From positions 1-16,238 of the forward strand of contig NIVC01005253.1 of the NCBI GenBank assembly GCA_002269645.1: 16,238 nt of DNA, written 5' to 3'. Position 1 is the first letter of the stretch, and every line of letters starts with the position of its first letter. The DNA comes from Macrostomum lignano (taxonomy: Eukaryota). The notes under the pieces were generated by a model. That model was not told the origin of the DNA, did not search any database, and saw only the letters and a program-made list of their open reading frames with translations. The position numbers were made by a program, and so were the translations under genes. Positions 1 to 16,238 of the stretch are shown here, piece after piece.

Positions 1-114
1 AGGCTGTGCGACTTTGGCTACTCGCAGGAGATGCTGAGCGGCCGTTCGACAAGCCGCTTGCCGGTGGGACTCCTCCGCTCCTGCCACTGCCGCCCGAGGT
101 GCTGGGAGGGCCAT
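1..114 (+). CDS. Ser/Thr protein kinase exon (5'-truncated by window), subdomains VII-VIII, one internal frameshift
   Basis: Frame from nt 1 reads RLCDFGYSQEML (DFG motif). Frame from nt 63 reads GGTPPLLPLPPEVLGGP (PE of subdomain VIII). Donor GTATGA at 115 is phase 1, matching the acceptor at 361. The DFG and PE frames differ by 1 nt. Confidence 0.8.
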
Positions 115-126
115 GTATGAGATTCC

Positions 127-309: not shown

Positions 310-361
310 CCAATAACTACTAATGACTCAATAACTATGCCATGCTCCATCCCTACCCCAG

Positions 362-777
362 GCCGTGGCTGCAGCGCTGACTGGTTCAGCTACGGCACGC
401 TGGCCTTCTGGCTGCTGCACCGCCGTTTTCCCATTGTGCCGCCGAGATTCGTCACCGACATCGCCGACTTCGCCAGCCACATGGCTGGCCGGGGCTTCGC
501 CGAGCTCGAGCGCGCGTTCGCTAACAAAGTGAGCCGAGTCTAACCGCGAACTCGTCATCGCCCTGCTGCAGCCGCGGCCGTCTCGGCGGCCAGTGGGATT
601 CTGCGGGTTCGCCGAGCACGCCAGCTGCTGGTGGAGAGCCGCCTGTTCCCGCGGGGTCACCGAGGCTGAGCAGCTGCGCCGGCTGGTTGAGTCCAACCGC
701 TGCTGGCGCCGTTCCTGCGCTGCCGCTGTAGGGCGAAGGCCAGAGGCGACTCGGGCTTGAAGGAGGTCACTTTCTGA
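362..777 (+). CDS. Ser/Thr protein kinase terminal exon, subdomains IX-XI plus C-tail; frameshifted (pseudogene or assembly error)
   Basis: Splicing 114->362 gives PPEVLGGP-C-RGCSADWFSYGTLAFWLLHRRFP, the usual 12-residue spacing from the subdomain VIII Glu to the subdomain IX Asp. Frame from 545 gives RELVIALLQPRPSRRP (subdomain XI), reached only via a 1-nt shift near 541 (TAAC vs TAC). The putative tail PLLAPFLRCRCRAKARGDSGLKEVTF* ends at TGA 775-777 after further shifts; the end point is less certain. Confidence 0.72.
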
Positions 778-1467: not shown

Positions 1468-1530
1468 ATGTCGCGAGACAGACTGCCGGACCTGAGGCGG
1501 GCGATGGCTTTGGGGGAGGATGCTGCTCAG
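1468..1530 (+). CDS. STX1: Syntaxin-1-like, first coding exon (N-peptide)
   Basis: ATG at 1468 reads MSRDRLPDLRRAMALGEDAAQ, matching the syntaxin N-peptide pattern M-x-(K/R)-D-R-L-x-x-L. Donor CAG|GTGAGA, phase 0. Confidence 0.85.
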
Positions 1531-1566: not shown

Positions 1567-2160
1567 GACAGTGGGACTGTCTGACAATGGGACTGTCTGA
1601 CAATGGGACTGTCTGACAATGGAACTGTCTGATAGTGGGACTGTCTGACAATGGGACTGTCTGACAATGGGACTATCTGACAATGGGACTGTCTGATAGT
1701 GGGACTGTCTGACTATGGGACTATCTGACAATTCTGACAATGAGACTATCTGACAATGGGACTATCTGACAATGGGACTATCTGACAATGGGACTGTCTG
1801 ACAATGGGACTATCTGACAATGGGACTATCTGACAATAGGACTATCTGACAATGGGACTGTCTGACAATGGGACTATATGACAATGGGACTATCTGACAA
1901 TGGGACTATCTGACAATGGGACTATCTGACAATGGGACTATCTGACAATGGGACTATCTGACAATGGGACTATCTGACAATGGGACTATCTGACAATGGG
2001 ACTATCTGACAATGGGACTATCTGACAATGGGACTATCTGACAATGGGACTGTCTGACAATGGGACTGTCTGACAGGGGACTGTCTGACAATGGGACTAT
2101 CTGACAATGGGACTGTCTGACAATGGGACTGTCTGACAGTGGGACTGTCTGACAATGGAC
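1567..2160 (+). repeat. 16-bp minisatellite TGGGACT(A/G)TCTGACAA, ~37 copies, in syntaxin intron 1
   Basis: Direct 16-nt periodicity. The G variant predominates at both ends and the A variant in the centre. Confidence 0.97.
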
Positions 2161-2186: not shown

Positions 2187-2423
2187 ATCGTGCCAGACGA
2201 AGAAGAGCTCGGCGACGAGAACTTTTCGATGGAACCGGACGATCAGCCGGGCAGGCGCGGAGACCCGAGCGTTGGCAGCGGCCGCGCAACTCCGAAGGCT
2301 TCATGGACGATTTTTTCGCTGACGTCGACGCTGTCCGTCGCCTGATTAACGAAATCGAAGCTAGCGTCTGCAGCGTCAGGATGAAGCACTCGCACATCCT
2401 GGCCTCGCCAAACAACGACCAGA
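2187..2423 (+). CDS. STX1: Syntaxin-1-like exon 2 (linker + Ha helix); 5' boundary uncertain (2187 or 2279)
   Basis: 2300-2423 reads FMDDFFADVDAVRRLINEIEASVCSVRMKHSHILASPNNDQ (cf. STX1A FMDEFFEQVEEIR...KHSAILASPNPDE). Donor GTGAGT at 2424, phase 1. The acidic stretch IVPDEEELGDENFSMEPDDQP (2187-2249) is in another frame. Confidence 0.85.
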
Positions 2424-2587: not shown

Positions 2588-2662
2588 AAACAAAGGAAGA
2601 ACTTGAAGTCCTGATGCAGAACATCAAGACCAACGCTAACAAAGTGCGAATGAAGCTCAAAG
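2588..2662 (+). CDS. STX1: Syntaxin-1-like exon 3 (Hb helix), 75 bp
   Basis: TTGCAG| (K)TKEELEVLMQNIKTNANKVRMKLK |GTTCGT, phase 1-1; cf. STX1A [24 protein letters not shown]. Confidence 0.95.
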
Positions 2663-2678
2663 GTTCGTGGCTACTGTT

Positions 2679-3057
2679 TATTGGGATCATTATCCCCTCA
2701 GAGCTCATTGGATCATTATCCCCCCGCCACTCATTAGGATCATTATCCCCCACCAGATTTCATTGGGATCATTAACCCCCACCAGAGATCATTGGATCAT
2801 TAAACCCCACCAGAGATCATTGGATCATTATCCCCCACCAGAGATCATTGGGATCATTATCCCCCACCAGATTTCATTGGTGATCATTAACCCCCGGAGT
2901 TCATTGGGATCATTATCCCCCCAGAGTTCATTGGGATCATTATCCCCCCAGAGTTCATTGGGATCATTATCCCCCACCAGAGATCATTGGGATCATTATC
3001 CCCCACCAGATTTCATTGGTGATCATTAACCCCCCGGAGTTCATTGGGATCATTATC
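2679..3057 (+). repeat. ~26-29-bp minisatellite CATTGGGATCATTATCCCCCACCAGAGAT, 14 copies
   Basis: Units start at about 2679, 2706, 2732, 2761, 2790, 2818, 2846, 2875, 2902, 2929, 2956, 2985, 3014 and 3042. Length variation is mostly in G and C homopolymer runs. Confidence 0.93.
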
Positions 3058-3116: not shown

Positions 3117-3192
3117 CCGTTGAGCAGGGTCTTGAGCAGAGTGAGCTGTCCGACGGTGGATCCACAGCCGACGTGCGAATCCGCAAAACCAG
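3117..3192 (+). CDS. STX1: Syntaxin-1-like exon 4 (Hb-Hc linker); 1 nt short at the 3' end
   Basis: CTCCAG| (A)VEQGLEQSELSDGGSTADVRIRKT+AG |GTAAAT; cf. [24 protein letters not shown]. At 76 bp it ends in phase 2, but the next acceptors are phase 0. Confidence 0.88.
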
Positions 3193-3358
3193 GTAAATTT
3201 CTGCTTTTACTGTTGCAGATTCTGACAGAAAAACAGGAAAGAAATTAATCGGCTTTCCCGCTCAGTCCAACACAAGAGCCTCTTAAAAATTTTTGCATAA
3301 ATTATTTTGCTAAAATCTCCGAAATACCAGAAAGTTTTAAAGCATTATTGCTTTGCAG

Positions 3359-3467
3359 CACTCGACAATCACGCGAAAGTTCATAGAGACAATGAGCGAG
3401 TACAACAGGGCCCAGTTGGAGTACCGCAGCGGCTGCAAGGCTCGGATTAGACGCCAGATGGAGATCA
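3359..3467 (+). CDS. STX1: Syntaxin-1-like Hc-helix exon, copy a (109 bp)
   Basis: TTGCAG| [36 protein letters not shown]+A |GTAATC, phase 0-1; cf. [36 protein letters not shown]. Confidence 0.95.
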
Positions 3468-3610
3468 GTAATCCGAGGCTTAGTTCGATTTGGCTAGACT
3501 CCTGTGCTGACTGGTGGCGCTGGTGAAGGCAAAATATTTTACCAGATATTAGTTGCACGCTGGCCCCTATTGGTGCGATCGTTTGGCGGTTAATTTTAAT
3601 GAATTCTTCT

Positions 3611-4463
3611 CTCTCTGTGCACACTTGATTGGACTCAGTGGCTGCCGGTTCTTATCTCTCTGTACACACTTGATTGGACTCAGTGGCTGCCGGTTCTTAT
3701 CTCTCTGTACACACTTGATTGGACTCAGTGGCTGCCGGTTCTTATCTCTCTGTACACACTTGATTGGACTCAGTGGCTGCCGGTTCTTATCTCTCTGTAC
3801 ACACTTGATTGGACTCAGTGGCTGCCGGTTCTTATCTCTCTGTACACACTTGATTGAACTCTATGGCTGCCGGTTCTTATCTCTCTGTACACACTTGATT
3901 GAACTCTATGGCTGCCGGTTCTTATCTCTCTGTACACACTTGATTGAACTCTATGGCTGCCGGTTCTTATCTCTCTGTACACACTTGATTGAACTCTATG
4001 GCTGCCGGTTCTTATCTCTCTGTACACACTTGATTGGACTCTATGGCTGCCGGTTCTTATCTCTCTGTACACACTTGATTGGACTCAGTGGCTGCCGGTT
4101 CTTATCTCTCTGTACACACTTGATTGAACTCTATGGCTGCCGGTTCTTATCTCTCTGTGCACACTTGCACACTTGCACACTTGAACTCTATGGCTGCCGG
4201 TTCTTATCTCTCTGTACACACTTGATTGGACTCAGTGGCTGCCGGTTCTTATCTCTCTGTACACACTTGATTGAACTCTATGGCTGCCGGTTCTTATCTC
4301 TCTGTGCACACTTGCACACTTGCACACTTGAACTCTATGGCTGCCGGTTCTTATCTCTCTGTACACACTTGATTGGACTCTATGGCTGCCGGTTCTTATC
4401 TCTCTGTACACACTTGATTGGATCTCTATGGCTGCCGGTTCTTATCTCTCTGTACACACTTGA
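3611..4463 (+). repeat. 45-bp minisatellite CTCTCTGTACACACTTGATTG(G/A)ACTC(AG/TA)TGGCTGCCGGTTCTTAT, ~19 copies
   Basis: 45-nt period with two variant classes and two 57-bp units. It accounts for ORFs 3553..4626 and 3815..4072. Confidence 0.97.
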
Positions 4464-4982
4464 TCTCGCGTATCCGCGTACCTCCCATATTTTACTCCGA
4501 AACACAATATTATTTAGAAAAGTGTCTATTGATAAAAATAATTTTAGTAGCCTTGTGTTCACCCGAATCTCAGTCTGGCTCAATAACAGGTATAAAAACT
4601 GGCTTCTGTTTTTGGGGGAGTGCTAGATGTCTTGGGGATCCCACTGGGGCGCTGAGCTGCAGAAGAGCGTCATAAAAAGCTTGCAGCAGGCACCAGGCTG
4701 AACTGAATGCCTGCGTGCCAAACTGCTGAAGCCTCAATTTGATTGACTGCACTATTCGATGTGGCCGCTTGTTGAGTGACGCCCCACTTCGCTTCCAGTG
4801 ACTTGTCGTTGCATTATTAATTTGCACGTCAGCCGATTGCAGAAAAATCCAATCAAAAGTGTCAGTTGAAAGTGAAATTTTAAATCATTTTCAGCAGCTG
4901 CTCAGATATCTTAGAGACCTAACTCGTTCCCCACCTCTCTCTCAGACCTCTCTCCAGGTCTCCCTCCCTCCGATTTCTGCGT

Positions 4983-5400
4983 CAGATCTCTCTGCATCAG
5001 ATCTCTCATAAGATCTCTCATCAGATCTCTCATCAGATCTCTCATCAGATCTCTCATCAAATCTCTCATCAGATCTCTCATGAGATCTCTCATCAGATCT
5101 CTCATCAAATCTCTCATCAGATCTCTCATCAGATCTCTCATCAGATCTCTCATCAGATCTCTCATCAAATCTCTCATCAGATCTCTCATGAGATCTCTCT
5201 CATCAAATCTCTCATCAGATCTCTCATCAGATCTCTCATCAGATCTCTCATCAGATCTCTCATCAGATCTCTCATGAGATCTCTCTCATCAAATCTCTCA
5301 TCAAATCTCTCATCAGATCTCTCATCAGATCTCTCATCAGATCTCTCATCAGATCTCTCATCAGATCTCTCATGAGATCTTTCATCAGCTCTCTCAGATC
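4983..5400 (+). repeat. 12-bp tandem repeat ATCTCTCATCAG, ~34 copies
   Basis: 12-nt period with CAA and ATGAG variants. It accounts for the (MRDL)n and (RSLI)n ORFs. Confidence 0.97.
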
Positions 5401-5487
5401 CTCGCAGAGGATACCTACTGACATGCAGAGCTTCTCTAGTGAAGCCGTCAGTCAGAGCAGCGCGGCCCGCACCCACCGCAATTCCAG

Positions 5488-5596
5488 CACCTGACGCTTT
5501 CCCGCAAATTTGTGGACGCCATCAGCCGCTACAACGCCTGCCAGATCGCCTTCAGGCAGGGCTGCAAGGCGAAGATTTCTCGCCATTTAGCGCTCA
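5488..5596 (+). CDS. STX1: Syntaxin-1-like Hc-helix exon, copy b (109 bp), candidate mutually exclusive alternative exon
   Basis: TTCCAG| HLTLSRKFVDAISRYNACQIAFRQGCKAKISRHLAL+A |GTAAGA. Same length and phases as 3359-3467, 16/36 identical residues, no stops. Confidence 0.85.
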
Positions 5597-6411
5597 GTAA
5601 GAAAGCTGCTCTGCGAGCTCGTGGCTTTGAGCTTGAGAAGCATTCAGGCTTGTGCCCGCTCGAATCTTGATTGTTTGTTGCATTGCACGGTGCTTTGTTA
5701 TTTTTATGCCTTGTTGTGGCTTTGGGGCAGCACATTCTGTTGTTAACAGGCGCCCGCCCAGCCATTTGTCAACAATACTGAGTGCTCGCGAACTACAGAG
5801 CTTGAAAAAAATTTGAGAATTGACTTCTGCTGCTAGAAGAAATCTTTATGGCTATTTCCGCTGCTTGAGGACCGTTCTTCTGGTATAAAAGAAAATGTTT
5901 CCGCTCGTCTGTCTTTTTTTCTGCTTCGAACTTGCTATATCCTATATACTAAAAATGAGTTGTCTGTGGGTATGCGATAGATTTCAGAAAAAATGGCTCA
6001 ACCGATTTTCTTCAAACTTGCACCATTCGATCAGAAATTCTCCTGGGACGGTACATGCATCTTGGCTAAGAAATTGCTATATATTAAAGGGATTAAATAT
6101 TCGAAAAACATGCTTTTTTGCAAAGGTCAAGCAAAATTTTCGACTTGAAATGCATTGTAAGAATGCTAGAGAAAAAACTGACTGGCTGAATTTCAATTCT
6201 GATAAAGATTGCATCACAACAAGTAGAAAACAGTGCCGAAGAAATGCACACACGACTTGATTTAAATTGCGTAACCAATATTGCTAACTTGAATTGAAAC
6301 TGATACTGGCTGACTGAGAAATTGATTTTGTCATAACTTTTTACTCTAATTGACTTGCTGTAAGAATTGAATTATAAGGGCCACAATTGATGTACTCCAA
6401 TTGAAAAGAGA

Positions 6412-6488
6412 TAGCCCAGATGCGAACAGACTGGAATGCTAATGTAGCGACCTGGGTTCGAATCTTAGTAGTGCAAAATAATTTTTTT
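6412..6488 (+). promoter_or_regulatory. tRNA-like Pol III A-box/B-box plus oligo-T inside the Helitron (second copy at ~9881-9957)
   Basis: TAGCCCAGATG at 6412; CTGGG-TTCGAAT-CTTAG T-arm geometry at 6452-6468; T7 at 6482-6488. No acceptor stem or anticodon stem can be folded. Confidence 0.4.
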
Positions 6489-6517
6489 ATTAAAACACCT
6501 TGAAAACATGAAACTGC

Positions 6518-8912
6518 TAAACATAAAAGAAGCACAATGTCAAACATATCAGTGGCACCATGTCGAACATTAAAGAGCCACCATGCCAAACATAAACGAG
6601 CCACCATGTCAAGCATTAAAAAGCCACCATGTCAAACATATTTGTGACTCCATGTAAAACATATATACGTGACTCCATGTCAAACATAAAAGAGCCACCA
6701 TGTCAAACGTAAAAGAACCGACATGTTGAACATTAAAGAGCCACCATGTCAAACGTAAAAGAACCACCATGTCGAACTTTAAAGAGCCACCATGTCAAAC
6801 GTAAAAGAACCGACATGTCGAACATTAAAGAGCCACCATGTCAAACATTAAAGAGCCACCATGTCAAAAATTAAAGAGCCACTTTGTCATACTTAAAAGA
6901 GCCACCATGTCAAACATTAAAGAGCTACCATGTCAAACATAAAAAAGCCACCATGTCAAACTTTAAAGAGCCACCACGTCGAACGTGAAAAAGCCACCAT
7001 GTCAAGCATAAAAGAGCCACCATGTCTAACAATAAAGAACCACTTTTTCGAACATTAAACAGCCACCATGTCAAATGTAAAAGAACCGACATGTCGAACA
7101 TTAAAGAGCCACGATGTCAAACATTAAAGAGCCACCATGTCAAAAATTAAAGAGCCACTTTGTCATACTTAAAAGAGCCACCATGTCGAACATTAAAGAG
7201 CTACCATGTCAAACATAAAAAAGCCACCATGTCAAACTTTAAAGAGCCACCACTTCGAACGTGAAAAAGCCACCATGTCAAACATAAAAGAGCCACCATG
7301 TCTAACAATAAAGAACCACCATGTCGAACATTAAAGAGCTACCATGTCAAGCATAAAAGAGCCGACATGTCGAAAATTAAAGAGCTACCATGTCAAACAT
7401 TAACGAGCCACCATGTCAAACATTAAAGAGCCACTTTGTCGAAAATTAAAGAGCTACCATGTCAAACATAAAAGAGCCAACATGTCGAAAATTAAAGAGC
7501 CACCATGTCAAACGTAAAAGAACCACCATGTCGAACATTTAAGAGCTACAATGTCAAACATTTAAGAGCCACCATGTCAAACGTAAAAGAACCACCATGT
7601 CGAACATTTAAGAGCTACAATGTCAAACATTAAAGAGCCACCATGTCAAACATTAAAGAGCCACCATGTCAAACATAAAGGAGCCACTTTTTCGAACATT
7701 AAAGAGCCACCACGTTGAACATTAAAGAGCCACCATGTCGAACATTAAAGAACCACCATGTCAAACATTAAAGAGCCACCATGTCAAATAATAAAGAGCC
7801 ACCATGTCAAACATTTAAGAGCCACCATGAAAAAAATTTAAAGAGCCACCATGTCTAACATTAAAGAGCCACCATGTCCAACATGCAACATTAAAGAGCC
7901 ACCATGTCCAACATATATGTGACTCCATGTCGAACATTAAAGAGCCACCATGTCGAACGTTAAAGAGCCACCATGTCGAACATAAAAGAGCCACCATGTA
8001 AAACATTAAAGAGCCACCATGTCTAACATTAAAGAGCCACCATGTCGAACGTTAAAGAGCCACCATGTCAAACATTAACGAGTCACCATGTCAAGCGTAT
8101 ACGTGACTCCATGTCAAACATTAAAGAGCCATCATTTCAGACATTAAAGTGTCACCATGTCGAACATTAAAAAGCCACCATGTCCAACATTAAAGAGCCA
8201 CCATGTCTAACATATATGTGACTCCAAGTCGAACATTAAAGAGCCACCATGTCCAACATGCAACATTAAAGAGCCACCATGTCCAACATATATGTGACTC
8301 CATGTCGAACATTAAAGAGCCACCATGTCGAACGTTAAAGAGCCACCATGTCGAACATAAAAGAGCCACCATGTAAAACATTAAAGAGCCACCATGTCTA
8401 ACATTAAAGAGCCACCATGTCGAACGTTAAAGAGCCACCATGTCAAACATTAACGAGTCACCATGTCAAGCGTATACGTGACTCCATGTCAAACATTAAA
8501 GAGCCATCATTTCAGACATTAAAGTGTCACCATGTTGAACGTTAAAGAGCCACCATGTCGAACATTAAAGAGCCACCATGTAAAGCATATATGTGACTCC
8601 ATGCCAAATATATACATGACTCCATGTCTAACACATACATGACTCCATGTCAAACATTAAAGAGCCACCCTGTCGAACGTTAAAGAGCCACAATGTAGAA
8701 CATTAAAGAGCCACCATGTCGAACGTTAAAGAGCCACCATGTCGAACATTAAAGAGCCACTTTGTCAAACATAGAAGAGCCACCATGTCAAACATAGAAG
8801 AGCCACCATGTCAGACATTGGAAGCCACCGTATCAAACATAAAAGAGTTACCATGTTGAACAAAAAAGAGCCACAATGTAGAACATAAAAGAGCCACCCT
8901 GTTAAACATAAA
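6518..8912 (+). repeat. 23-bp minisatellite CATGTC(A/G)AACAT(T/A)AAAGAGCCAC, ~104 copies (Helitron copy 1)
   Basis: 23-nt period. Three units give the 23-aa pseudo-repeat seen in the ORF track. Confidence 0.97.
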
Positions 8913-9002
8913 ATATACACAATTTCAAATGTAAAAGTAAGTGAATTTTAAAGGAGCCGCTATAATGCTAAAGAAATTGTCGCACTAGCTACTTATTGTC
9001 TG

Positions 9003-9250
9003 GTGGATGCTTGCTATTTGGGGATGCTATCTATCTTGGGATGCTTGCTATCTGGGGGATGCTTGCTATCTGGGGATGCTTGCTATCTGGGGGATGCTTG
9101 CTATCTGGGGGATGCTTGCTATCTGGGGGATGCTTGCTATCTGGGGATGCTTGCTATCTGGGGGATGCTTGCTATCTGGGGGATGCTTGCTATCTGGGGG
9201 ATGCTTGCTATCTGGGGGATGCTTACTATCTGGGGGATGCTTGCTGTCTT
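9003..9250 (+). repeat. 17/18-bp minisatellite GGGG(G)ATGCTTGCTATCT, ~14 copies (Helitron copy 1)
   Basis: Direct periodicity; homogeneous array. Confidence 0.96.
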
Positions 9251-9989
9251 GCGATGATTTCTTTTTGCATTGCACTTCATTTGAGTATTTTGTCTGTTTT
9301 CTTTGTGAAGGCTTTATTTCGCTATTTTTTGTTACTTACTTGTAGAGAACAGAGACTCTATATAGATGTCCCCCAACGGGGGGCAAAGATTGCTAGTCCT
9401 ATATACTAAAAATGAGTTGTCTGTATGTATGTATGTATATGGGTATGCGATTGATTTCAGAAAAAACGGCTCAACCGATTTTCTTCAAACTTGCATCATT
9501 CGATCAGAAATTTTCCTGGCACAGTACATGCATCTTGGCTAAGAAATTGCTCAATGTTAAAGGGATTAAATATTCGAAAAACACGCTTTTTTGCAAAGGT
9601 CAAGCAAAATTTTCGACTTGAAATGCATTGTAAGAATGCTAGAGAAAAACTGACTGACTGAATTTCAATTCTGATAAAGATTGCATCACAACAAGTTGAA
9701 AACAGTGCCGAAGAAATGCACACACGACTTGATTGAAATTGCGTAACCATATTGCTAACTCGAAGTGAGACTGATACTGGCTGACTGAGAAATTGATTAT
9801 GTCATAACTTTTTACTCCAATTGACTTGCTGTAAGAATTGAATTATAAGGGCACAATTCATTTCTCCAATTGAAAAGAGATAGCCCTGATGCGAACAGAC
9901 TGGAATGCTAATGTAGCGACCTGGGTTCGAGTCTTAGAAGCGCAAAATAATTTTTTTATTAAAACACCTTAAAAACTAAAAAAACTGCT

Positions 9990-12900
9990 AAACATAAAAA
10001 AAGCGCAATAGAAGAGCCACCATGTCAAACCTAAAGGAGCACCATGTCGAACATTAAAGAACCACCATGTCGAACATAAAAGAGCCACCATATCGAACAT
10101 AAAAGAGTTACCATGTTAAAAATTAAAGAGCCACCATGTCGAACATAGAAGAGCCACCATGTCGAACATAGAAGAGCCACCATGTCAAACATTAAAGAGC
10201 CACCATATCAAACATAAAAGAGTTACCATGTCAAACATTAAAGAGCCACATTGTCAAGCATTAAAGACCACCATTTCAAACCTAAAATAGTTACCATGTC
10301 AAACATTCAATAGCCACCATGTCAAACATTAAAGAGCCACCATGTCGAACATAAAAGAGCCACCATATTAAACATAAAAGAGTTACCATGTCAAACATTA
10401 AAGAGCCACCATGTCGAACATTAAAGAGCCACCATGTCAAACATTAAAGAGCCACATTGTCAAGCATTAAAGACCACCATTTCAAACCTAAAAGAGCCAC
10501 CATGTCAAACATTAAAGAGCCACCATGTCGAACATTAAAGAGCCACCTTGTCAAATATTAAAGAGCCACCATTTCAAACCTAAAGAAGCCACCATGTCGA
10601 ACATACAAGAGCCACCATGTCGAACATAGAAAAGCCACCATGTCAAACATTAAAGAGTCACCATGTCAAACATTAAAGAGCCACCGTTTCAAACCTAAAA
10701 GCCACATGTTAAAAATTAAAGAGCCACCATGTCAAACATAAAACAGACACCATTAAGAACATTAAAGAGCCACCATGTCAAATATAAAACAGCCACCATT
10801 TCGAAAATTAAGGAGCCACCATTTCAAAAATTTAAGAGCCGCTATGTTAAACATTAAAGGGCCACCTTGTCAAATATTAAAGAGCCACCATTCAAACCTA
10901 AAAGAGCGACCCTGTCGAACATACAAGAGCCACCATGTCGAACATAAAAGAGCCACCATGTCGAACATACAAGAGCCACCATGTCGAACATAGAAAAGCC
11001 ACCATGTCGAACATAGAAAAGCCACCATGTTAAACATTAAAGAGCCAATATTTCAAACCTAAAGGAGCCACCATGTCGAACATAAAAGAGTCACCATGTT
11101 AAAAATTAAAGAGCCACCATGTCGAACATTAAAGAGCCACCATTTCAAACATTAAAGAGCCACCATGTCAAACATTAAAGAGCCACCGGTTCAAACCTAA
11201 AAGAGCCACCATGTCGAACATTAAAGAGCCACCATGTCAAACATTAAAACAGACACCATGTCAAACATTAAAGAGCCACCATGTCAAACATTAAAGAGCC
11301 ACCGGTTCAAACCTAAAAGAGCCACCATGTCGAACATTAAAAAGCCACCATGTCAAACATTAAAGAGCCACCATTGTCAAACATTAAAAAGCCACCATTT
11401 CAAACCTAAAAGAGCCACCATGTCAAACATTAAAGAGCCACCATGTCAAACATTAAAGAGCCACCTTGTCAAATATTAAAGAGCCACCATTTCAAACCTA
11501 AAGAAGCCACCATGTCGAACATACAAGAGCCACCATGTCGAACATTAAAGAGCCACCATATCAAACATAAAAGAGTTACCATGTCAAACATTAAAGAGCC
11601 ACCATGTCAAACATTAAAGAGCCACCATGTCGAAACATAAAGAGCCACCATATCAAACATAAAAGAGTTACCATGTCAACATTAAAGAGCCACCATGTCG
11701 AACATTAAAGAGCCACCATGTCAAACATTAAAGAGCCACCATGTCAAACATTAAAGAGCCACCATGTCGAACATAAAAGAGCCACCATATCAAACATTAA
11801 AGAGTTACCATGTCAAACATTAAAGAGCCACATTGTCAAGCATTAAAGACCACCATTTCAAACCTAAAATAGTTACCATGTCAAACATTCAATAGCCACC
11901 ATGTCAAACATTAAAGAGCCACCATGTCGAACATAAAAGAGCCACCATATTAAACATAAAAGAGTTACCATGTCAAACATTAAAGAGCCACCATGTCGAA
12001 CATTAAAGAGCCACCATGTCAACATTAAAGAGCCACATTGTCAAGCATTAAAGACCCACCATTTCAAACCTAAAGAAGCCATGTCAAACATTAAAGAGCC
12101 ACCATGTCGAACATAAAGAAAAGCCACCATGTCAAACATTAAAGAGTCACCATGTCAAACATAAAGAGCCACCGTTTCAAACCTAAAAGAGCCACCATGT
12201 TAAAAATTAAAGAGCCACCATGTCAAACATAAAACAGACACCATTAAGAACATTAAAGAGCCACCATGTCAAATATAAAAACAGCCACCATTTCGAAAAT
12301 TAAGGAGCCACCATTTCAAAAATTTAAAACAGAGCCGCTATGTTAAACATTAAAGGGCCACCTTGTCAAATATTAAAGAGCCACCATTTCAAACCTAAAA
12401 GAGCGACCATGTCGAACATACAAGAGCCACCATGTCGAACATAAAAGACCACCATGTCGAACATACAAGAGCCACCATGTCGAACATAGAAAAGCGACCA
12501 TGTCGAACATAGAAAAGCCACCATGTTAAACATTAAAGAGCCAATATTTCAAACCTAAAGGAGCCACCATGTCGAACATAAAAGTCACCATGTTAAAAAT
12601 TAAAGAGCCACCATGTCGAACATTAAAGAGCCACCATTTCAAACATTAAAGAGCCACCATGTCAAACATTAAAGAGCCACCGGTTCAAACCTAAAAGAGC
12701 CACCATGTCGAACATTAAAGAGCCACCATGTCAAACATAAAGAGACACCATGTCAAACATTAAAGAGCCACCATGTCAAACATTAAAGAGCCACCGGTTC
12801 AAACCTAAAAGAGCCACCATGTCGAACATTAAAAAGCCACCATGTCAAACATTAAAGAGCCACCATGTCAAACATTAAAGCCACCATTCAAACCTAAAAG

Positions 12901-15020
12901 AGCCACCATGTCAAACATTAAAGAGCCACCATGTCAAACATTAAAGAGCCACCTTGTCAAATATTAAAAGCACCATTTCAAACCTAAAGAAGCCACCATG
13001 TCGAACATACAAGAGCCACCATGTCGAACATTAAAGAGCCACCATATCAAACATAAAAGAGTTACCATGTCAAACATTAAAGAGCCACCATGTCAAACAT
13101 TAAAGAGCCACCATGTCGAACATAAAAGAGCCACCATATCAAACATAAAAGAGTTACCATGTCAAACATTAAAGAGCCACCATGTCGAACATTAAAGAGC
13201 CACCATGTCAAACATTAAAGAGCCACCTTGTCAAATATTAAAGAGCCACCATTTCAAACCTAAAAGAGCCACCATGTCGAACATTAAAGAGCCACCTTGT
13301 CAAATATTAAAGAGCCACCATTTCAAACCTAAAGAAGCCACCATGTCGAACATACAAGAGCCACCATGTCGAACATAAAAGAGCCACCATATCAAACATA
13401 AAAGAGCCACCATGTCGAACATAAAGAGCCACCATGTCGAACATAAAACAGCACCATTCAAAACATTAAAAGAGCCACCATGTCGAACATTAAAGAGCCA
13501 CCATGTCAAATATAAAACAGCCACCATTTCGAAAATTTAAGAGCCGCCATGTTAAACATTAAAGGGCCACCTTGTCAAATATTAAAGAGCCACCATTTCA
13601 AACCTAAAAGAGCGACCCTGTCGAACATACAAGAGCCACAATGTCGAACATAAAAGAGCAGCTATGTAGAACATAAAAGAGCCACCATGTCAAACATAAA
13701 AAGCCACCATGTCAAACATAAAAGAGCCAACATGTAGAACATAAAAGAGCCACCATGTCGAACATTAAAGAGCCACCATGTCGAACATACAAGAGCCACC
13801 ATGTCGAACATAGAAAAGCCACCATGTCGAACATAGAAAAGCCACCATGTTAAACATTAAAGAGCCAATATTTCAAACCTTAAGGAGCCACCATGTCGAA
13901 CATAAAAGAGTCACCATGTTAAAATTAAAGAGCCACCATGTCGAACATTAAAGAGCCACCATGTCGAACATTAAAGAGCCACCATGTCAAACATAAAACA
14001 GACACCATGTCAAACATTAAAGAGCCACCGGTTCAAACCTAAAAGAGCCACCATGTCGAACATTAAAGAGCCACCTTGTCAAATATTAAAGAGCCACCAT
14101 TTCAAACCTAAAGGAGCCACCATGTCGAACATTAAAAAGCCACCATGTCGAACATTAAAAAGCCAACATGTCAAACATAAAAGAGCCACCATGTCAAACC
14201 TAAAAAAGCCACCATGTCAAACATAGAAGAGCCACCATGTCAAACATAATAGAGCCACCATGTCAAACATTAAAGAGCCACCATGTCAAACATAGAAGAG
14301 CCACTATGTCAAACATAAAGAGCCACCATGTCGAACATAAAAGAGTCACCATGCTTAAAAATTAAAGAGCCACCATGTCGAACATTAAAGAGCCACCATG
14401 TCGAACATTAAAGAGCCACCATGTCGAACATTAAAGAGCCACCATATCAAACATAAAAGAGTTACCATGTCAAACATTAAAGAGCCACCATGTCGAACAT
14501 TAAAGAGCCACCATATCAAACATAAAACAGACACCATGTCAAACATTAAAGAGCCACCATGTCGAACATTAAAGAGCCACCATGTCAAACATAAAACAGC
14601 CACCATTTCGAAAATTAAGGAGCCACCATTTCGAAATTAAAGAGCGCCCATGTTAACCATTCAAACATTAAAGAGCCACCATGTCAAACATAAAGAGCCA
14701 CCATGTCGAACATAAAGAGCCACCATGTTCGAAGCCATTAAAGAGCCACCATGTCGAACATTAAAAGCCACCCGGTGTCAAACTAAAAGAGCCACATGTC
14801 GAACATTAAAAAGCCACCATGTCAAACATAAAAAAGTCAACCATGTCAACATAAAGAGCCACCATGTCAAACCTAAAAAAGCCACCATGTCAAACATAGA
14901 AGAGCCACCATGTCGAACATAAAAGAGCCACTTATGTCAAACATAAAAGAGCCACCATGTCAAACATAGAGAGAGCCACTATGTCAAACATAAAAGAGCC
15001 ACCATGTCAAACATTCAAGA
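9990..15020 (+). repeat. 23-bp minisatellite, ~215-220 copies (Helitron copy 2)
   Basis: Same consensus as 6518-8912 but different diagnostic variants; contains ~1.5-kb block duplications. Confidence 0.97.
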
Positions 15021-15118
15021 TATCCAATTTCAAATGTAAAGGTATAAAGCGCCATGCCAATTTAAAGGAGCCACTATAAAGCTAAGGAAATTGTGTCGCT
15101 CTAGCTACTTATTGTCTG

Positions 15119-15690
15119 GTGGATGGTTGCTATTTGGGGATGCTATCTATCTTGGGGATGCTTGCTATTTGGAGGATGCTTGCTTTCTGGGGGATGCTTG
15201 CTATCTGGGGAATGTTGTAATCTGGGAATGCTTGCTATCTGTGGGGATGCTTGCTATCTGGGGGATGTTGCTATCTGGGATGCTTGCTATCTGGTGGATG
15301 CTTGCTATCTGAGGGATGCTTGCTATCTGAGTGATGCTTGCTATCTGGGGATGCTTGCTATCTGGGTATGCTTGCTATCTGAGGGATGCTTGCTATTTGG
15401 GGTATGCTTGCTATCTGAGGGATGCTTGCTATCTTGGGGATGCTTTGCTATCTGGGGATGCTTGCTATCCTGCGGAATGCTTGCTATCTGGGGAATGCTT
15501 GCTATCTGGGGGATGTTTGCTATCTGGGGGTGCTTGCTATCTGGGGGATGCTTGCTATCTGGGGGGATGCTTTGCTATCTGGAGGATGCTTGCTATCTTG
15601 GGGATGCTTGCTATCTGGGAAATGCTTGCTATCTGGGAGAATGCTTGCTATCTGGAGGATGCTTGCTATCTGGGGGATGCTTGTGGTCTT
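15119..15690 (+). repeat. 17/18-bp minisatellite, ~32 copies (Helitron copy 2)
   Basis: Same consensus as 9003-9250 but more heterogeneous. Confidence 0.96.
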
Positions 15691-15830
15691 GGGAAGATTT
15701 CTTATTGCAATTCACTTCATTTGAGCAGTTTGTCTGTTGTCTTTGTGAAGGATTTTTGGCTGTCTTTTGTTAATTGTAGAGAACAGAGATTCTATCCAGA
15801 TGTCCCCCATCGGGGGGCGAAGATTGCTAG

Positions 15831-16238
15831 TCCTATATACTAAAAATGAGTTGTCTGTATGTATGTATGGGGGTAGGCATGCGATAGATTTCAGAAAAAA
15901 TTGGCTCAACCGATTATCTTCAAACTTGCACCATTCGATCTCAGAATTTTCCGGACGGTACATGCATCTTGGCTAAAAATTGCTCAATGTTAAAGGGATT
16001 AAATATTCCAAAAACATGCTTTTTTTGCAAAGGTCAAGCAGCTCTTTCGACCTGAAATGCATTGTAAGAATGCTAGAGAAAAAACTGACTGACTGAATTC
16101 GATTTGTGATAAAGATTGCATCCAACAAGTTGAAAACAGTGCCGAAGAAATGCACACACGACTTGATTTAAATTGCGTAACCATATTGCTAACTTGAATT
16201 GAGACTGATACTGGCTGACTGAGAAATTGATTATGTCA
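15831..16238 (+). mobile_element. Non-autonomous Helitron-type element, copy 3 (5' part; runs off the window)
   Basis: CTAG|TCCTATATACTAAAAATGAG junction; colinear with 5940-6335 and 9397-9805. Confidence 0.85.

What the first reader, a model, noticed from the sequence alone, without database searches (positions are those of the whole stretch)
3359..5596. Duplicated Hc-helix exon in a syntaxin-1 gene: candidate mutually exclusive splicing of the Habc domain
Seen: two 109-bp exons 2 kb apart, each with a YAG acceptor, GTAA donor, phase 0-1 and no stops. They encode [36 protein letters not shown] and HLTLSRKFVDAISRYNACQIAFRQGCKAKISRHLAL (16/36 identical, many other changes conservative). Both have GCKA where canonical syntaxin-1 has RCKG, which suggests duplication within this lineage. 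No copy of the neighbouring exons was found between them. Including both shifts the frame (109 is not a multiple of 3), as expected for mutually exclusive exons. Established: Hc packs against the H3 SNARE motif in the Munc18-bound closed form, and duplicated-exon switching is known for SNAP-25 exon 5a/5b. I do not know of it for the syntaxin-1 Hc exon. Inference: two isoforms with different closed-state stability or Munc18/Munc13 interaction; copy b loses most acidic residues (4 Glu in a, 1 Asp in b).
Basis: partly seen in the sequence, partly recalled or inferred. Interest (0 to 1): 0.85.

Follow-up and report, generated by a model that had tools for sequence, protein, structure and literature searches.

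The report
Ancient alternative Hc exon pair, syntaxin-1
A flatworm (Macrostomum) syntaxin-1 gene carries two versions of the 109-base exon for its regulatory Hc helix, and the same "a then b" pair is found in at least 12 other invertebrate genomes, so it looks like an old either/or splicing switch in a core neurotransmitter-release protein, although use of the second copy in this flatworm is not yet shown.

Summary
Exons 3359-3467 (5a) and 5488-5596 (5b) are both 109 nt, have AG acceptors and GTAA donors, are open in the same frame, and share 16/36 residues.

The gene is syntaxin-1 of Macrostomum: 5a and exon 4 are 97% identical to a M. lignano protein.

The duplication is not lineage-specific. 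The same tandem pair, an a-type exon upstream of a b-type exon, each 109 nt with intact splice sites, occurs in 12 other unidentified animal loci.

- **Selection:** in those animals both copies are under strong purifying selection. Protein sequence is nearly unchanged while synonymous sites are saturated.
- **Reading frame:** only "exactly one copy" keeps the frame.
- **Transcripts:** two environmental mRNAs carry the a exon spliced directly to exon 6.
- **Assignment:** window 5a is clearly a-type. 5b has all three b-type diagnostic residues but is unusually diverged.

No transcript evidence for 5b in Macrostomum could be obtained.

As sequenced, exon 4 lacks one base (ACC AG|gt where other animals have ACN CAG|gt), so neither copy is in frame. 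This is either an assembly indel or a decaying gene copy.

I found no paper describing this switch.

Verdict: a probable conserved mutually exclusive exon pair, and a new variant of a known mechanism.

The parts
1468..1530 (+). Syntaxin-1 exon 1 (ATG; MSRDRLPDLRRAMALGEDAAQ), donor CAG|gtgaga
   Evidence: the DRLxxL N-peptide resembles invertebrate syntaxin-1 (P0003)
2279..2423 (+). Exon 2 (RPRNSEGFMDDFFADV...ILASPNNDQ). The acceptor at 2278|2279 keeps the frame with exon 1 and puts FMDDFF at residue 29, as in human STX1A. An alternative acceptor at 2186|2187 opens an acidic ORF (IVPDEEELGDENFSMEPDDQ) but would then need a frameshift.
2588..2662 (+). Exon 3 (KTKEELEVLMQNIKTNANKVRMKLK), 75 nt
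3117..3192 (+). Exon 4 (AVEQGLEQSELSDGGSTADVRIRKT + AG), 76 nt. It is one base short of the conserved ...ACN CAG|gt ending, so exon 5a or 5b is read out of frame as sequenced.
   Evidence: P0015 has RIRKTQHST
3359..3467 (+). Exon 5a, the a-type Hc/linker exon (human STX1A residues 120-155), 109 nt, cag| ... |gtaatc
   Evidence: 35/36 identical to M. lignano P0015; 26-28/36 identical to a-type exons of L001, L002 and L004
3604..4464 (.). 45-bp tandem array (18.6 copies) in the intron between 5a and 5b
4989..5396 (.). 12-bp tandem array (33.6 copies) in the same intron
5488..5596 (+). Exon 5b, a diverged b-type Hc/linker exon, 109 nt, cag| ... |gtaaga. It has the b-type states L4, C18 and L34.
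5597..16238 (.). Start of the intron after exon 5. It holds only repeats (a 23-bp satellite of about 370 copies, 18-bp arrays and a repeated ~0.55-kb unit). Exon 6 onwards is not in the window.

Best explanation
The window holds the 5' half of a Macrostomum syntaxin-1 gene. Its exon 5 encodes the C-terminal two-thirds of the Hc helix and the first residues of the Hc-H3 linker, including the Munc13 contact residues R151 and I155 of mammalian syntaxin-1. This exon exists as two tandem, homologous 109-nt copies. They are not a recent local duplication. They are the Macrostomum versions of an old a-type/b-type exon pair found in the same order in many other, probably spiralian, animals. Because 109 is not a multiple of 3, and exon 4 ends in phase 0 while exon 6 starts in phase 1, only transcripts with exactly one copy stay in frame. 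Double inclusion or double skipping gives an early stop codon, and such transcripts would presumably be removed by nonsense-mediated decay. The result would be two syntaxin-1 isoforms that differ only in the Hc/linker surface. Shown: the anatomy; orthology of 5a to a-type; conservation of, and purifying selection on, both copies in other animals; the reading-frame logic; and a-type mRNAs that lack b. Inferred: that 5b is still spliced into Macrostomum mRNA, that choice of copy is regulated by cell type or stage, and that the isoforms differ in closed/open equilibrium or Munc18/Munc13 handling. The single missing base at the end of exon 4 is most simply a long-read assembly indel.
For: - **Identity of the gene:** 5a and exon 4 are 97% identical to the M. 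lignano t-SNARE protein P0015. Both variants match Pfam Syntaxin.
- **First sign of a wider pair:** an exhaustive HMMER search with 5b found an ORF (P0024) that reads through two tandem Hc exons on an environmental contig.
- **Breadth:** twelve distinct loci (L001, L002, L004, L014, L015/L019, L016, L017, L018, L020/L021, L023, L026, L039) carry a-type then b-type exons, each 109 nt with AG and GT, 212-3169 nt apart. L002 and L004 show a single exon 4 upstream of the pair and a single exon 6 downstream.
- **Selection on the a exon:** L001 vs L004 share 34/36 residues while synonymous sites are saturated (pS ~1).
- **Selection on the b exon:** L001, L002 and L003 share 36/36 residues with pS 0.7-1.0.
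- **Reading frame in L002:** a-only and b-only are in frame; a+b stops 6 codons into b; skipping both stops in exon 6.
- **Transcripts:** full-length spliced mRNAs L012 and L013 have e4|a|e6. Leech cDNA P0003 uses the a-type exon.
- **Diagnostic columns 4, 18 and 34:** a-type is I/A/M and b-type is L(M)/C/L. Window 5a has I, A, M and 5b has L, C, L. 5b is nearer to b-types in 1533 of 2000 column bootstraps.
- **State of 5b:** exact length, open frame and both splice sites are kept, GC3 is 0.81, and changes are fewest at codon position 2. pN against mollusc-like b exons is 0.25 with saturated pS.
- **Functional site:** R151 and I155 are the Munc13 MUN contact (PMC8728020). They are exon positions 32 and 36.
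Against: - No transcript or predicted protein containing Macrostomum 5b exists in the searchable collections. This is weak evidence, because the collections hold almost no Macrostomum sequence.
- 5b is by far the most diverged member. It shares at most 20/36 residues with any b-type, has 10 residues seen nowhere else, and has changed 4 of the 10 positions invariant in all 18 other sequences (Y22F, R29K, Q33H, I36L). This fits relaxed constraint as well as it fits specialisation.
- Some lineages have lost one copy. Leech and oligochaete-type loci are a-only; L003 and L005 are b-only. Loss is therefore a real option.
- As sequenced, the gene copy in the window is out of frame after exon 4.
- Exons 6-9 are not within 10.6 kb downstream.
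- The taxa of the comparison loci are unknown.
Confidence: 0.68

Rival explanations
1. 5b is a relic. The ancestral a/b switch existed, but Macrostomum now uses only 5a, as clitellate annelids do, and 5b is a recently silenced pseudo-exon drifting in the intron.
For: 5b is the fastest-evolving copy. It has 10 unique residues and 4 changes at otherwise invariant positions, and its pN is twice that of 5a. The only annotated Macrostomum protein uses 5a. Flatworm (cestode) and clitellate syntaxins are a-type. No 5b-containing protein was found.
Against: 5b keeps its exact 109-nt length and has no stop or indel. Both splice sites are intact, and its donor (gtaaga) is closer to consensus than that of 5a. 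All four changes at invariant sites are conservative. The hydrophobic positions 4, 8, 12, 15, 22, 26, 30 and 34 are all still hydrophobic. GC3 is 0.81. Long neutral decay would rarely leave all of this in place.
Confidence: 0.25
2. The whole gene copy in the window is a decaying duplicate, for example one homeolog of the partly duplicated M. lignano genome. The missing base at the end of exon 4 would then be real, and neither exon 5 copy would be translated from this locus.
For: Exon 4 ends ACC AG|gt instead of ACN CAG|gt, so e4+5a and e4+5b both terminate early. The copy differs from P0015 at 2 of 62 residues, so it is a different allele, paralogue or species. Exon 6 onwards is missing and the downstream 10.6 kb is satellite.
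Against: All other exons are open, with intact splice sites and 97% protein identity to P0015. The unrelated kinase-like gene at 1-530 also needs a one-base frame switch between its DFG and PPE motifs. The satellite copies differ by many single-base indels. Both points suggest sequencing or assembly indels rather than two independent pseudogenes. This rival also does not change what the exon pair is.
Confidence: 0.3
3. 5b belongs to a different syntaxin paralogue. It was brought next to 5a by partial gene duplication or by misassembly across the satellite arrays.
For: The region is full of tandem arrays where misjoins are easy. 5b is only 44% identical to 5a.
Against: No other syntaxin exon lies near 5b. 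Twelve independent loci in other animals show the same a-then-b arrangement; where the contig reaches the neighbouring exons (L002, L004) the pair sits between a single exon 4 and a single exon 6. No protein of a divergent paralogue matching 5b exists in 1.84 billion representatives.
Confidence: 0.03

Closest known systems
SNAP-25 exon 5a/5b (vertebrates)
   Same: A tandem duplicated exon in a neuronal SNARE gene is spliced in a mutually exclusive way, giving isoforms that differ by a few residues in a helix. The duplication is old and conserved (PMC2581893).
   Different: It is a different SNARE (Qbc rather than Qa) and affects the SNARE motif and palmitoylation region, not an autoinhibitory domain. 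It is found in vertebrates. Splicing and function have been shown experimentally for SNAP-25, but not here.
C. elegans unc-64 (syntaxin-1) exons 8a/8b, and similar C-terminal alternative exons in other syntaxins
   Same: This is alternative use of tandem homologous exons in the syntaxin-1 gene itself, regulated by cell type through UNC-75/CELF (PMC4946901). Locus L002 also has two tandem last exons (17294-17404 and 17447-17575).
   Different: Those exons encode the membrane anchor at the C-terminus. The pair described here replaces the Hc helix and linker start (residues 120-155), the part that governs the closed conformation and carries the Munc13 R151/I155 site.
Canonical syntaxin-1 Hc exon (vertebrate STX1A/1B, arthropod Syx1A)
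   Same: The b-type exon is its counterpart: [29 protein letters not shown]. Human STX1A shares 19/36 residues with 5b and about 57% with 5a.
   Different: The vertebrate and arthropod sequences retrieved show one copy only. The a-type copy (I4, A18, DGCKA, M34) was seen only in the flatworm, the leech and oligochaete-type worms, a cestode and the unidentified loci.

Membership tests
Syntaxin-1 / Qa-SNARE (Pfam PF00804 Syntaxin N-terminal domain) | Habc domain matching the Syntaxin profile | tested here: met
   PF00804 E 2.3e-27 with 5a and 4.3e-25 with 5b, well above the gathering score. Best relatives are syntaxin-1 and syntaxin-2 proteins.
Syntaxin-1 / Qa-SNARE (Pfam PF00804 Syntaxin N-terminal domain) | H3 SNARE motif and C-terminal transmembrane anchor | tested here: not met
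   Neither is present in the window. The near-identical M. lignano protein P0015 has both, so the gene probably continues beyond the window.
Mutually exclusive exons arising by tandem exon duplication | Adjacent homologous exons of equal length and equal phase, with their own intact splice sites | tested here: met
   Both are 109 nt, with cag| acceptors and |gtaa donors, and share 16/36 residues and 64/109 bases.
Mutually exclusive exons arising by tandem exon duplication | Including both or neither disrupts the reading frame | tested here: met
   109 is not a multiple of 3. In L002, a+b and skip-both give early stops, while a-only and b-only are in frame. In the window, a+b shifts the frame through all of 5b.
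Mutually exclusive exons arising by tandem exon duplication | Mature transcripts contain exactly one of the two exons, and both kinds of transcript exist | not testable with these tools
   No Macrostomum transcripts are reachable. The a-only mRNAs L012 and L013 come from related but unidentified animals. No b-only mRNA from an animal that has both exons was recovered.
Mutually exclusive exons arising by tandem exon duplication | Both copies under purifying selection | tested here: inconclusive
   The test is met in other animals: a exons share 34/36 residues and b exons 36/36 with saturated synonymous sites. For Macrostomum 5b there is only indirect evidence: pN 0.25 against b-types, codon-position pattern, intact frame and splice sites. 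Its divergence is unusually high.
a-type / b-type Hc exon pair (defined here from the loci fetched) | Diagnostic residues at exon positions 4, 18 and 34 (a: I, A, M; b: L/M, C, L), with the a exon upstream of the b exon | tested here: met
   5a has I, A, M and 5b has L, C, L. 5a groups with a-types in 2000 of 2000 column bootstraps, and 5b with b-types in 1533 of 2000. The order a then b is the same in all 12 other loci.

The most novel reading that the evidence does not exclude
Syntaxin-1 of many spiralian animals (flatworm and mollusc-like or annelid-like lineages) has an ancient, conserved either/or switch for the Hc helix and the start of the linker, which includes the Munc13 R151/I155 contact. 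Each such animal would then make two syntaxin-1 proteins with different autoinhibition or priming properties from one gene. No paper I could search describes this layer of SNARE regulation.
Probability: 0.55. Interest if true: 0.72.

Novelty: new variant of a known kind. Interest (0 to 1): 0.6.

Why it matters
The Habc domain and its linker decide whether syntaxin-1 is closed (bound to Munc18) or can be opened by Munc13. This is the step that primes synaptic vesicles.

So far this step has been probed mainly with engineered mutants such as LE (L165A/E166A) and R151A/I155A. A naturally conserved pair of alternative Hc/linker exons would be evolution's own set of variants at exactly this site.

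- It would say which residues tune priming.
- It would suggest that different cells in these animals run syntaxin-1 with different set points.
- If the unidentified loci include neurobiology models such as Aplysia, Lymnaea, Octopus or Platynereis (not established here), the isoforms could be tested there directly.
- It adds a second SNARE gene, besides SNAP-25, in which an ancient exon duplication was kept as a splicing switch.

For the Macrostomum window itself the practical messages are two: the 5b exon should be annotated and checked, and this stretch of the assembly contains frame-breaking single-base indels.

Tried and rejected
- **Protein search with the 5b peptide:** no candidate shared enough words.
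- **Look-up of M. lignano P0015 in the contig index:** not on record, so no paralogous Macrostomum locus could be fetched.
- **Third protein search with a mixed a/b alignment:** it returned only short arthropod and vertebrate fragments. No named invertebrate isoforms came back, so the taxa of the a+b loci stay unknown.
- **Hairpin over the 5a donor (3437-3449 / 3469-3481):** the fold is no better than shuffles (z -0.92) and is absent at the orthologous exons of L001, L002 and L004. Rejected as a regulatory structure. No other inverted repeats were found around 5b.
- **Frameshift in exon 2:** I first assumed one was needed. An acceptor at 2279 removes the need.
- **The 11-nt identical run GGCTGCAAGGC shared by 5a and 5b:** considered as a gene-conversion tract. 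My own rough estimate gives about a 0.1 chance of such a run arising by chance, and it covers the invariant C-K, so I make no claim.
- **Leech-like transcripts L009-L011:** they have an insert after 5a. I checked whether it was a b exon. It is an unrelated short retained intron.
- **NJ tree with bootstraps:** it timed out and was replaced by a column bootstrap.
- **Self-alignment of the satellite arrays:** it did not settle the question of assembly error versus real variation.
- **tRNA and Rfam scans of the window:** empty.
- **Literature searches for an Hc-exon switch in syntaxin:** four searches found nothing.
Full report
**What is in the window.** The sequence is eukaryotic and rich in tandem repeats. 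On the + strand it carries the 5' half of a syntaxin-1 gene:

| Exon | Coordinates | Notes |
|---|---|---|
| 1 | 1468-1530 | starts at ATG |
| 2 | 2279-2423 | in-frame acceptor at 2279; an alternative at 2187 would need a frameshift |
| 3 | 2588-2662 | 75 nt |
| 4 | 3117-3192 | 76 nt |
| 5a | 3359-3467 | 109 nt |
| 5b | 5488-5596 | 109 nt |

Exon 4 plus 5a is 97% identical to a Macrostomum lignano protein fragment, P0015. The source is therefore M. lignano or a close relative. With either exon 5, the conceptual product matches Pfam Syntaxin far above threshold. No exon 6 or later exon is present, neither with human STX1A nor with P0015 as query. Everything from 5597 to the end is satellite and other repeats.

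**Check of the observation.** The two exons share 64/109 bases, which none of 10,000 shuffles reach. Identity is highest at codon position 2 and lowest at position 3. The flanking introns are unalignable. This points to an old duplication of coding sequence.

Exon 4 ends ...AAA ACC AG|gt, which is 76 nt and phase 2. Both exon 5 copies need phase 0. In four other animals exon 4 ends ACN CAG|gt or ACA CAA|gt, in L002 (where the acceptor was placed) its length is 2 mod 3, and P0015 reads RIRKTQHST. As sequenced, e4+5a stops after nine codons and e4+5b after two.

The unrelated kinase-like gene at the left end also needs a one-base frame switch between its DFG and PPE motifs. The satellite copies differ by many single-base indels. 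I therefore think an assembly indel is the more likely cause, but a decaying duplicate copy is not excluded.

**The key result: the pair is old and widespread.** A word-indexed search with the 5b peptide found nothing. An exhaustive HMMER search of 1.84 billion representatives found a read-through ORF, P0024, that matches twice. Its contig, L001, carries two 109-nt Hc exons 212 nt apart, each with AG and GTAAG.

Further contigs reached through other hits and a scan of metagenome contigs with an a-type alignment give twelve distinct loci with the same layout:

- **Upstream "a-type" exon:** (Y/H)STI(S/T)RKF..YN.AQ..YR(D/E)GCKAR..RQMEI
- **Downstream "b-type" exon:** H/Y/C.TLSRKF..YN.CQ..YRE(R/K)CK.RIQRQL(E/A)I
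- **Both copies:** exactly 109 nt, with intact acceptor and donor

In L002 and L004 a single exon 4 precedes the pair and a single exon 6 follows it. Some lineages have only one copy. About 30 oligochaete-type loci and the leech transcripts are a-only. L003 and L005-L007 are b-only. In L008 the b exon is fused to exon 6.

**Both copies are real coding exons in those animals.**

- The a exons of L001 and L004 share 34/36 residues while synonymous sites are saturated.
- The b exons of L001, L002 and L003 share 36/36 residues with 16-24 synonymous differences.
- In L002, a-only and b-only transcripts are in frame. a+b stops six codons into b. Skipping both stops in exon 6.
- Two full-length spliced mRNAs from environmental transcript data, L012 and L013, have exon 4 joined to an a-type exon joined to exon 6. 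They are not from the same species as any genomic locus, with at most 86% base identity.
- Leech cDNA P0003 also uses the a-type exon.

Two copies under selection that cannot be co-included is the signature of mutually exclusive splicing.

**Where the Macrostomum exons fit.** 5a is plainly a-type. It shares 26-28/36 residues with the a-type exons of L001, L002 and L004, and it is closer to a than to b in 2000 of 2000 column bootstraps.

Three alignment columns separate all a-types from all b-types: position 4 (I versus L/M), 18 (A versus C) and 34 (M versus L). 5a has I, A, M and 5b has L, C, L. 5b also lies downstream, as every b exon does. Its A35 and Q24 recur in one b-type subgroup.

DGCKA is the general a-type motif. 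Its presence in 5b (QGCKA) is the exception and is unexplained.

5b is also the most diverged member of the whole set:

- It shares at most 20/36 residues with any b-type.
- It has ten residues seen in no other sequence.
- It has conservative changes at four positions invariant in all 18 others (Y22F, R29K, Q33H, I36L).
- Its non-synonymous distance to mollusc-like b exons is twice that of 5a to a exons (0.25 versus 0.12).

Against decay, it keeps the exact length, an open frame, both splice sites (its donor is better than that of 5a), every hydrophobic core position and a GC3 of 0.81.

**How it most likely works.** Exon 5 corresponds to human STX1A residues 120-155. This is the C-terminal two-thirds of Hc plus the start of the linker. 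It includes R151 and I155, which contact the Munc13 MUN domain during opening of syntaxin (PMC8728020). These are exon positions 32 and 36.

Choosing a or b would swap residues 123, 137, 143-144, 147 and 153 while leaving the rest of the protein unchanged. In Macrostomum 5b it would also change I155 to L and remove three of the four acidic residues. Plausible effects are on closed-state stability and on Munc18/Munc13 handling.

Mutual exclusion is enforced at least by the reading frame, presumably together with nonsense-mediated decay. The introns between copies are 212-3169 nt, so steric exclusion is unlikely. I found no supported RNA structure. A 13-bp hairpin over the 5a donor folds no better than shuffles and is not conserved. 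The functional consequences and the regulation are inferred, not shown.

**Comparison with what is known.** The closest cases are SNAP-25 exons 5a/5b (PMC2581893) and the tandem C-terminal exons 8a/8b of C. elegans unc-64/syntaxin (PMC4946901). L002 itself has such a C-terminal pair. Four literature searches found no description of an alternative Hc exon in any syntaxin. Genome annotations of molluscs or annelids may already list such isoforms. I could not check this, because the third protein search returned only short arthropod and vertebrate fragments.

**Limits.**

- No Macrostomum transcripts or second Macrostomum locus could be reached. Use of 5b in this animal is therefore unproven.
- The comparison loci are unidentified animals from environmental assemblies. 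Calling them spiralian rests on resemblance to leech and flatworm sequences and on my recollection of molluscan syntaxin.
- The frame defect at exon 4 is unresolved.

**Verdict.** The mutually-exclusive-exon reading is well supported as the ancestral and widespread state, and probable (about two in three) for Macrostomum itself. The lineage-specific origin is refuted. This is a new variant of a known mechanism, of moderate to good interest for SNARE biology.

Noticed in passing
window 3185-3194: Exon 4 ends ACC AG|gtaaat, one base short of the conserved ACN CAG|gt. This puts both exon 5 copies out of frame. It is either an assembly indel or a real frameshift in this gene copy.
   Followed up: partly
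window 1-115 and 353-530 (+ strand): A fragment of a protein-kinase-like gene lies upstream of the syntaxin gene, with an (AACT)n intron at 127-309. The DFG motif (frame 0) and the GTP...PPEVL motif (frame 2) are in different frames about 40 nt apart. The joined sequence matches Pkinase only weakly (E 2.8e-4, below the gathering score).
   Followed up: partly
window 1567-2158, 2676-3057, 3604-4464, 4989-5396: Introns 1 and 3 and the 5a-5b intron of the syntaxin gene each hold their own tandem array: 16-mer x37, 29-mer x14, 45-mer x19 and 12-mer x34.
   Followed up: no
window 5932-8937, 9390-12401, 15840-16238: A large repeated block (a ~0.55-kb unique unit, then the 23-bp satellite AAACATTAAAGAGCCACCATGTC, then the 18-bp satellite TCTGGGGGATGCTTGCTA) occurs at least twice at 82% identity, and a third copy starts at the window end. 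The 23-bp satellite has a higher-order period of about 1.47 kb. No tRNA or Rfam match was found.
   Followed up: partly
window 2187-2278: An acidic ORF (IVPDEEELGDENFSMEPDDQPG) sits behind a good acceptor at 2186|2187. It resembles the acidic N-terminal stretch of other syntaxin-1 proteins but is in a different frame from FMDDFF. It could be an alternative acceptor combined with an indel, or a coincidence.
   Followed up: partly
window 3437-3449 / 3469-3481: A 13-nt inverted repeat (12/13 complementary) brackets the 5' splice site of exon 5a. The fold is not better than shuffles (z -0.92) and is not conserved in other animals.
   Followed up: yes
L002 17294-17404 and 17447-17575: Two tandem homologous last exons (GEMIDRIEYNVEQAVDYIE... 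and GEMIDRVEFNVNQAVEYVD...) occur in the same syntaxin gene. They resemble the C-terminal alternative exons known from C. elegans unc-64.
   Followed up: no
L027-L056; L009-L011; L003, L005-L007; L008: The copies have been lost in different lineages. About 30 oligochaete-type loci and the leech transcripts have only the a exon. L003 and L005-L007 have only the b exon. In L008 the b exon is fused to exon 6, with no intron between them.
   Followed up: partly
L009 630-740, L010, L011 620-680: The leech-like transcript contigs keep a short insert, apparently a retained intron with stop codons, between exon 5a and exon 6. This splits the ORF in two, and the insert does not begin with GT.
   Followed up: partly
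L001 566-1294: The public gene call P0024 reads TAG as a sense codon and runs through both Hc exons and the intron between them. It is a prokaryote-style mis-call on eukaryotic DNA in a metagenome, and it is what exposed the tandem pair.
   Followed up: yes
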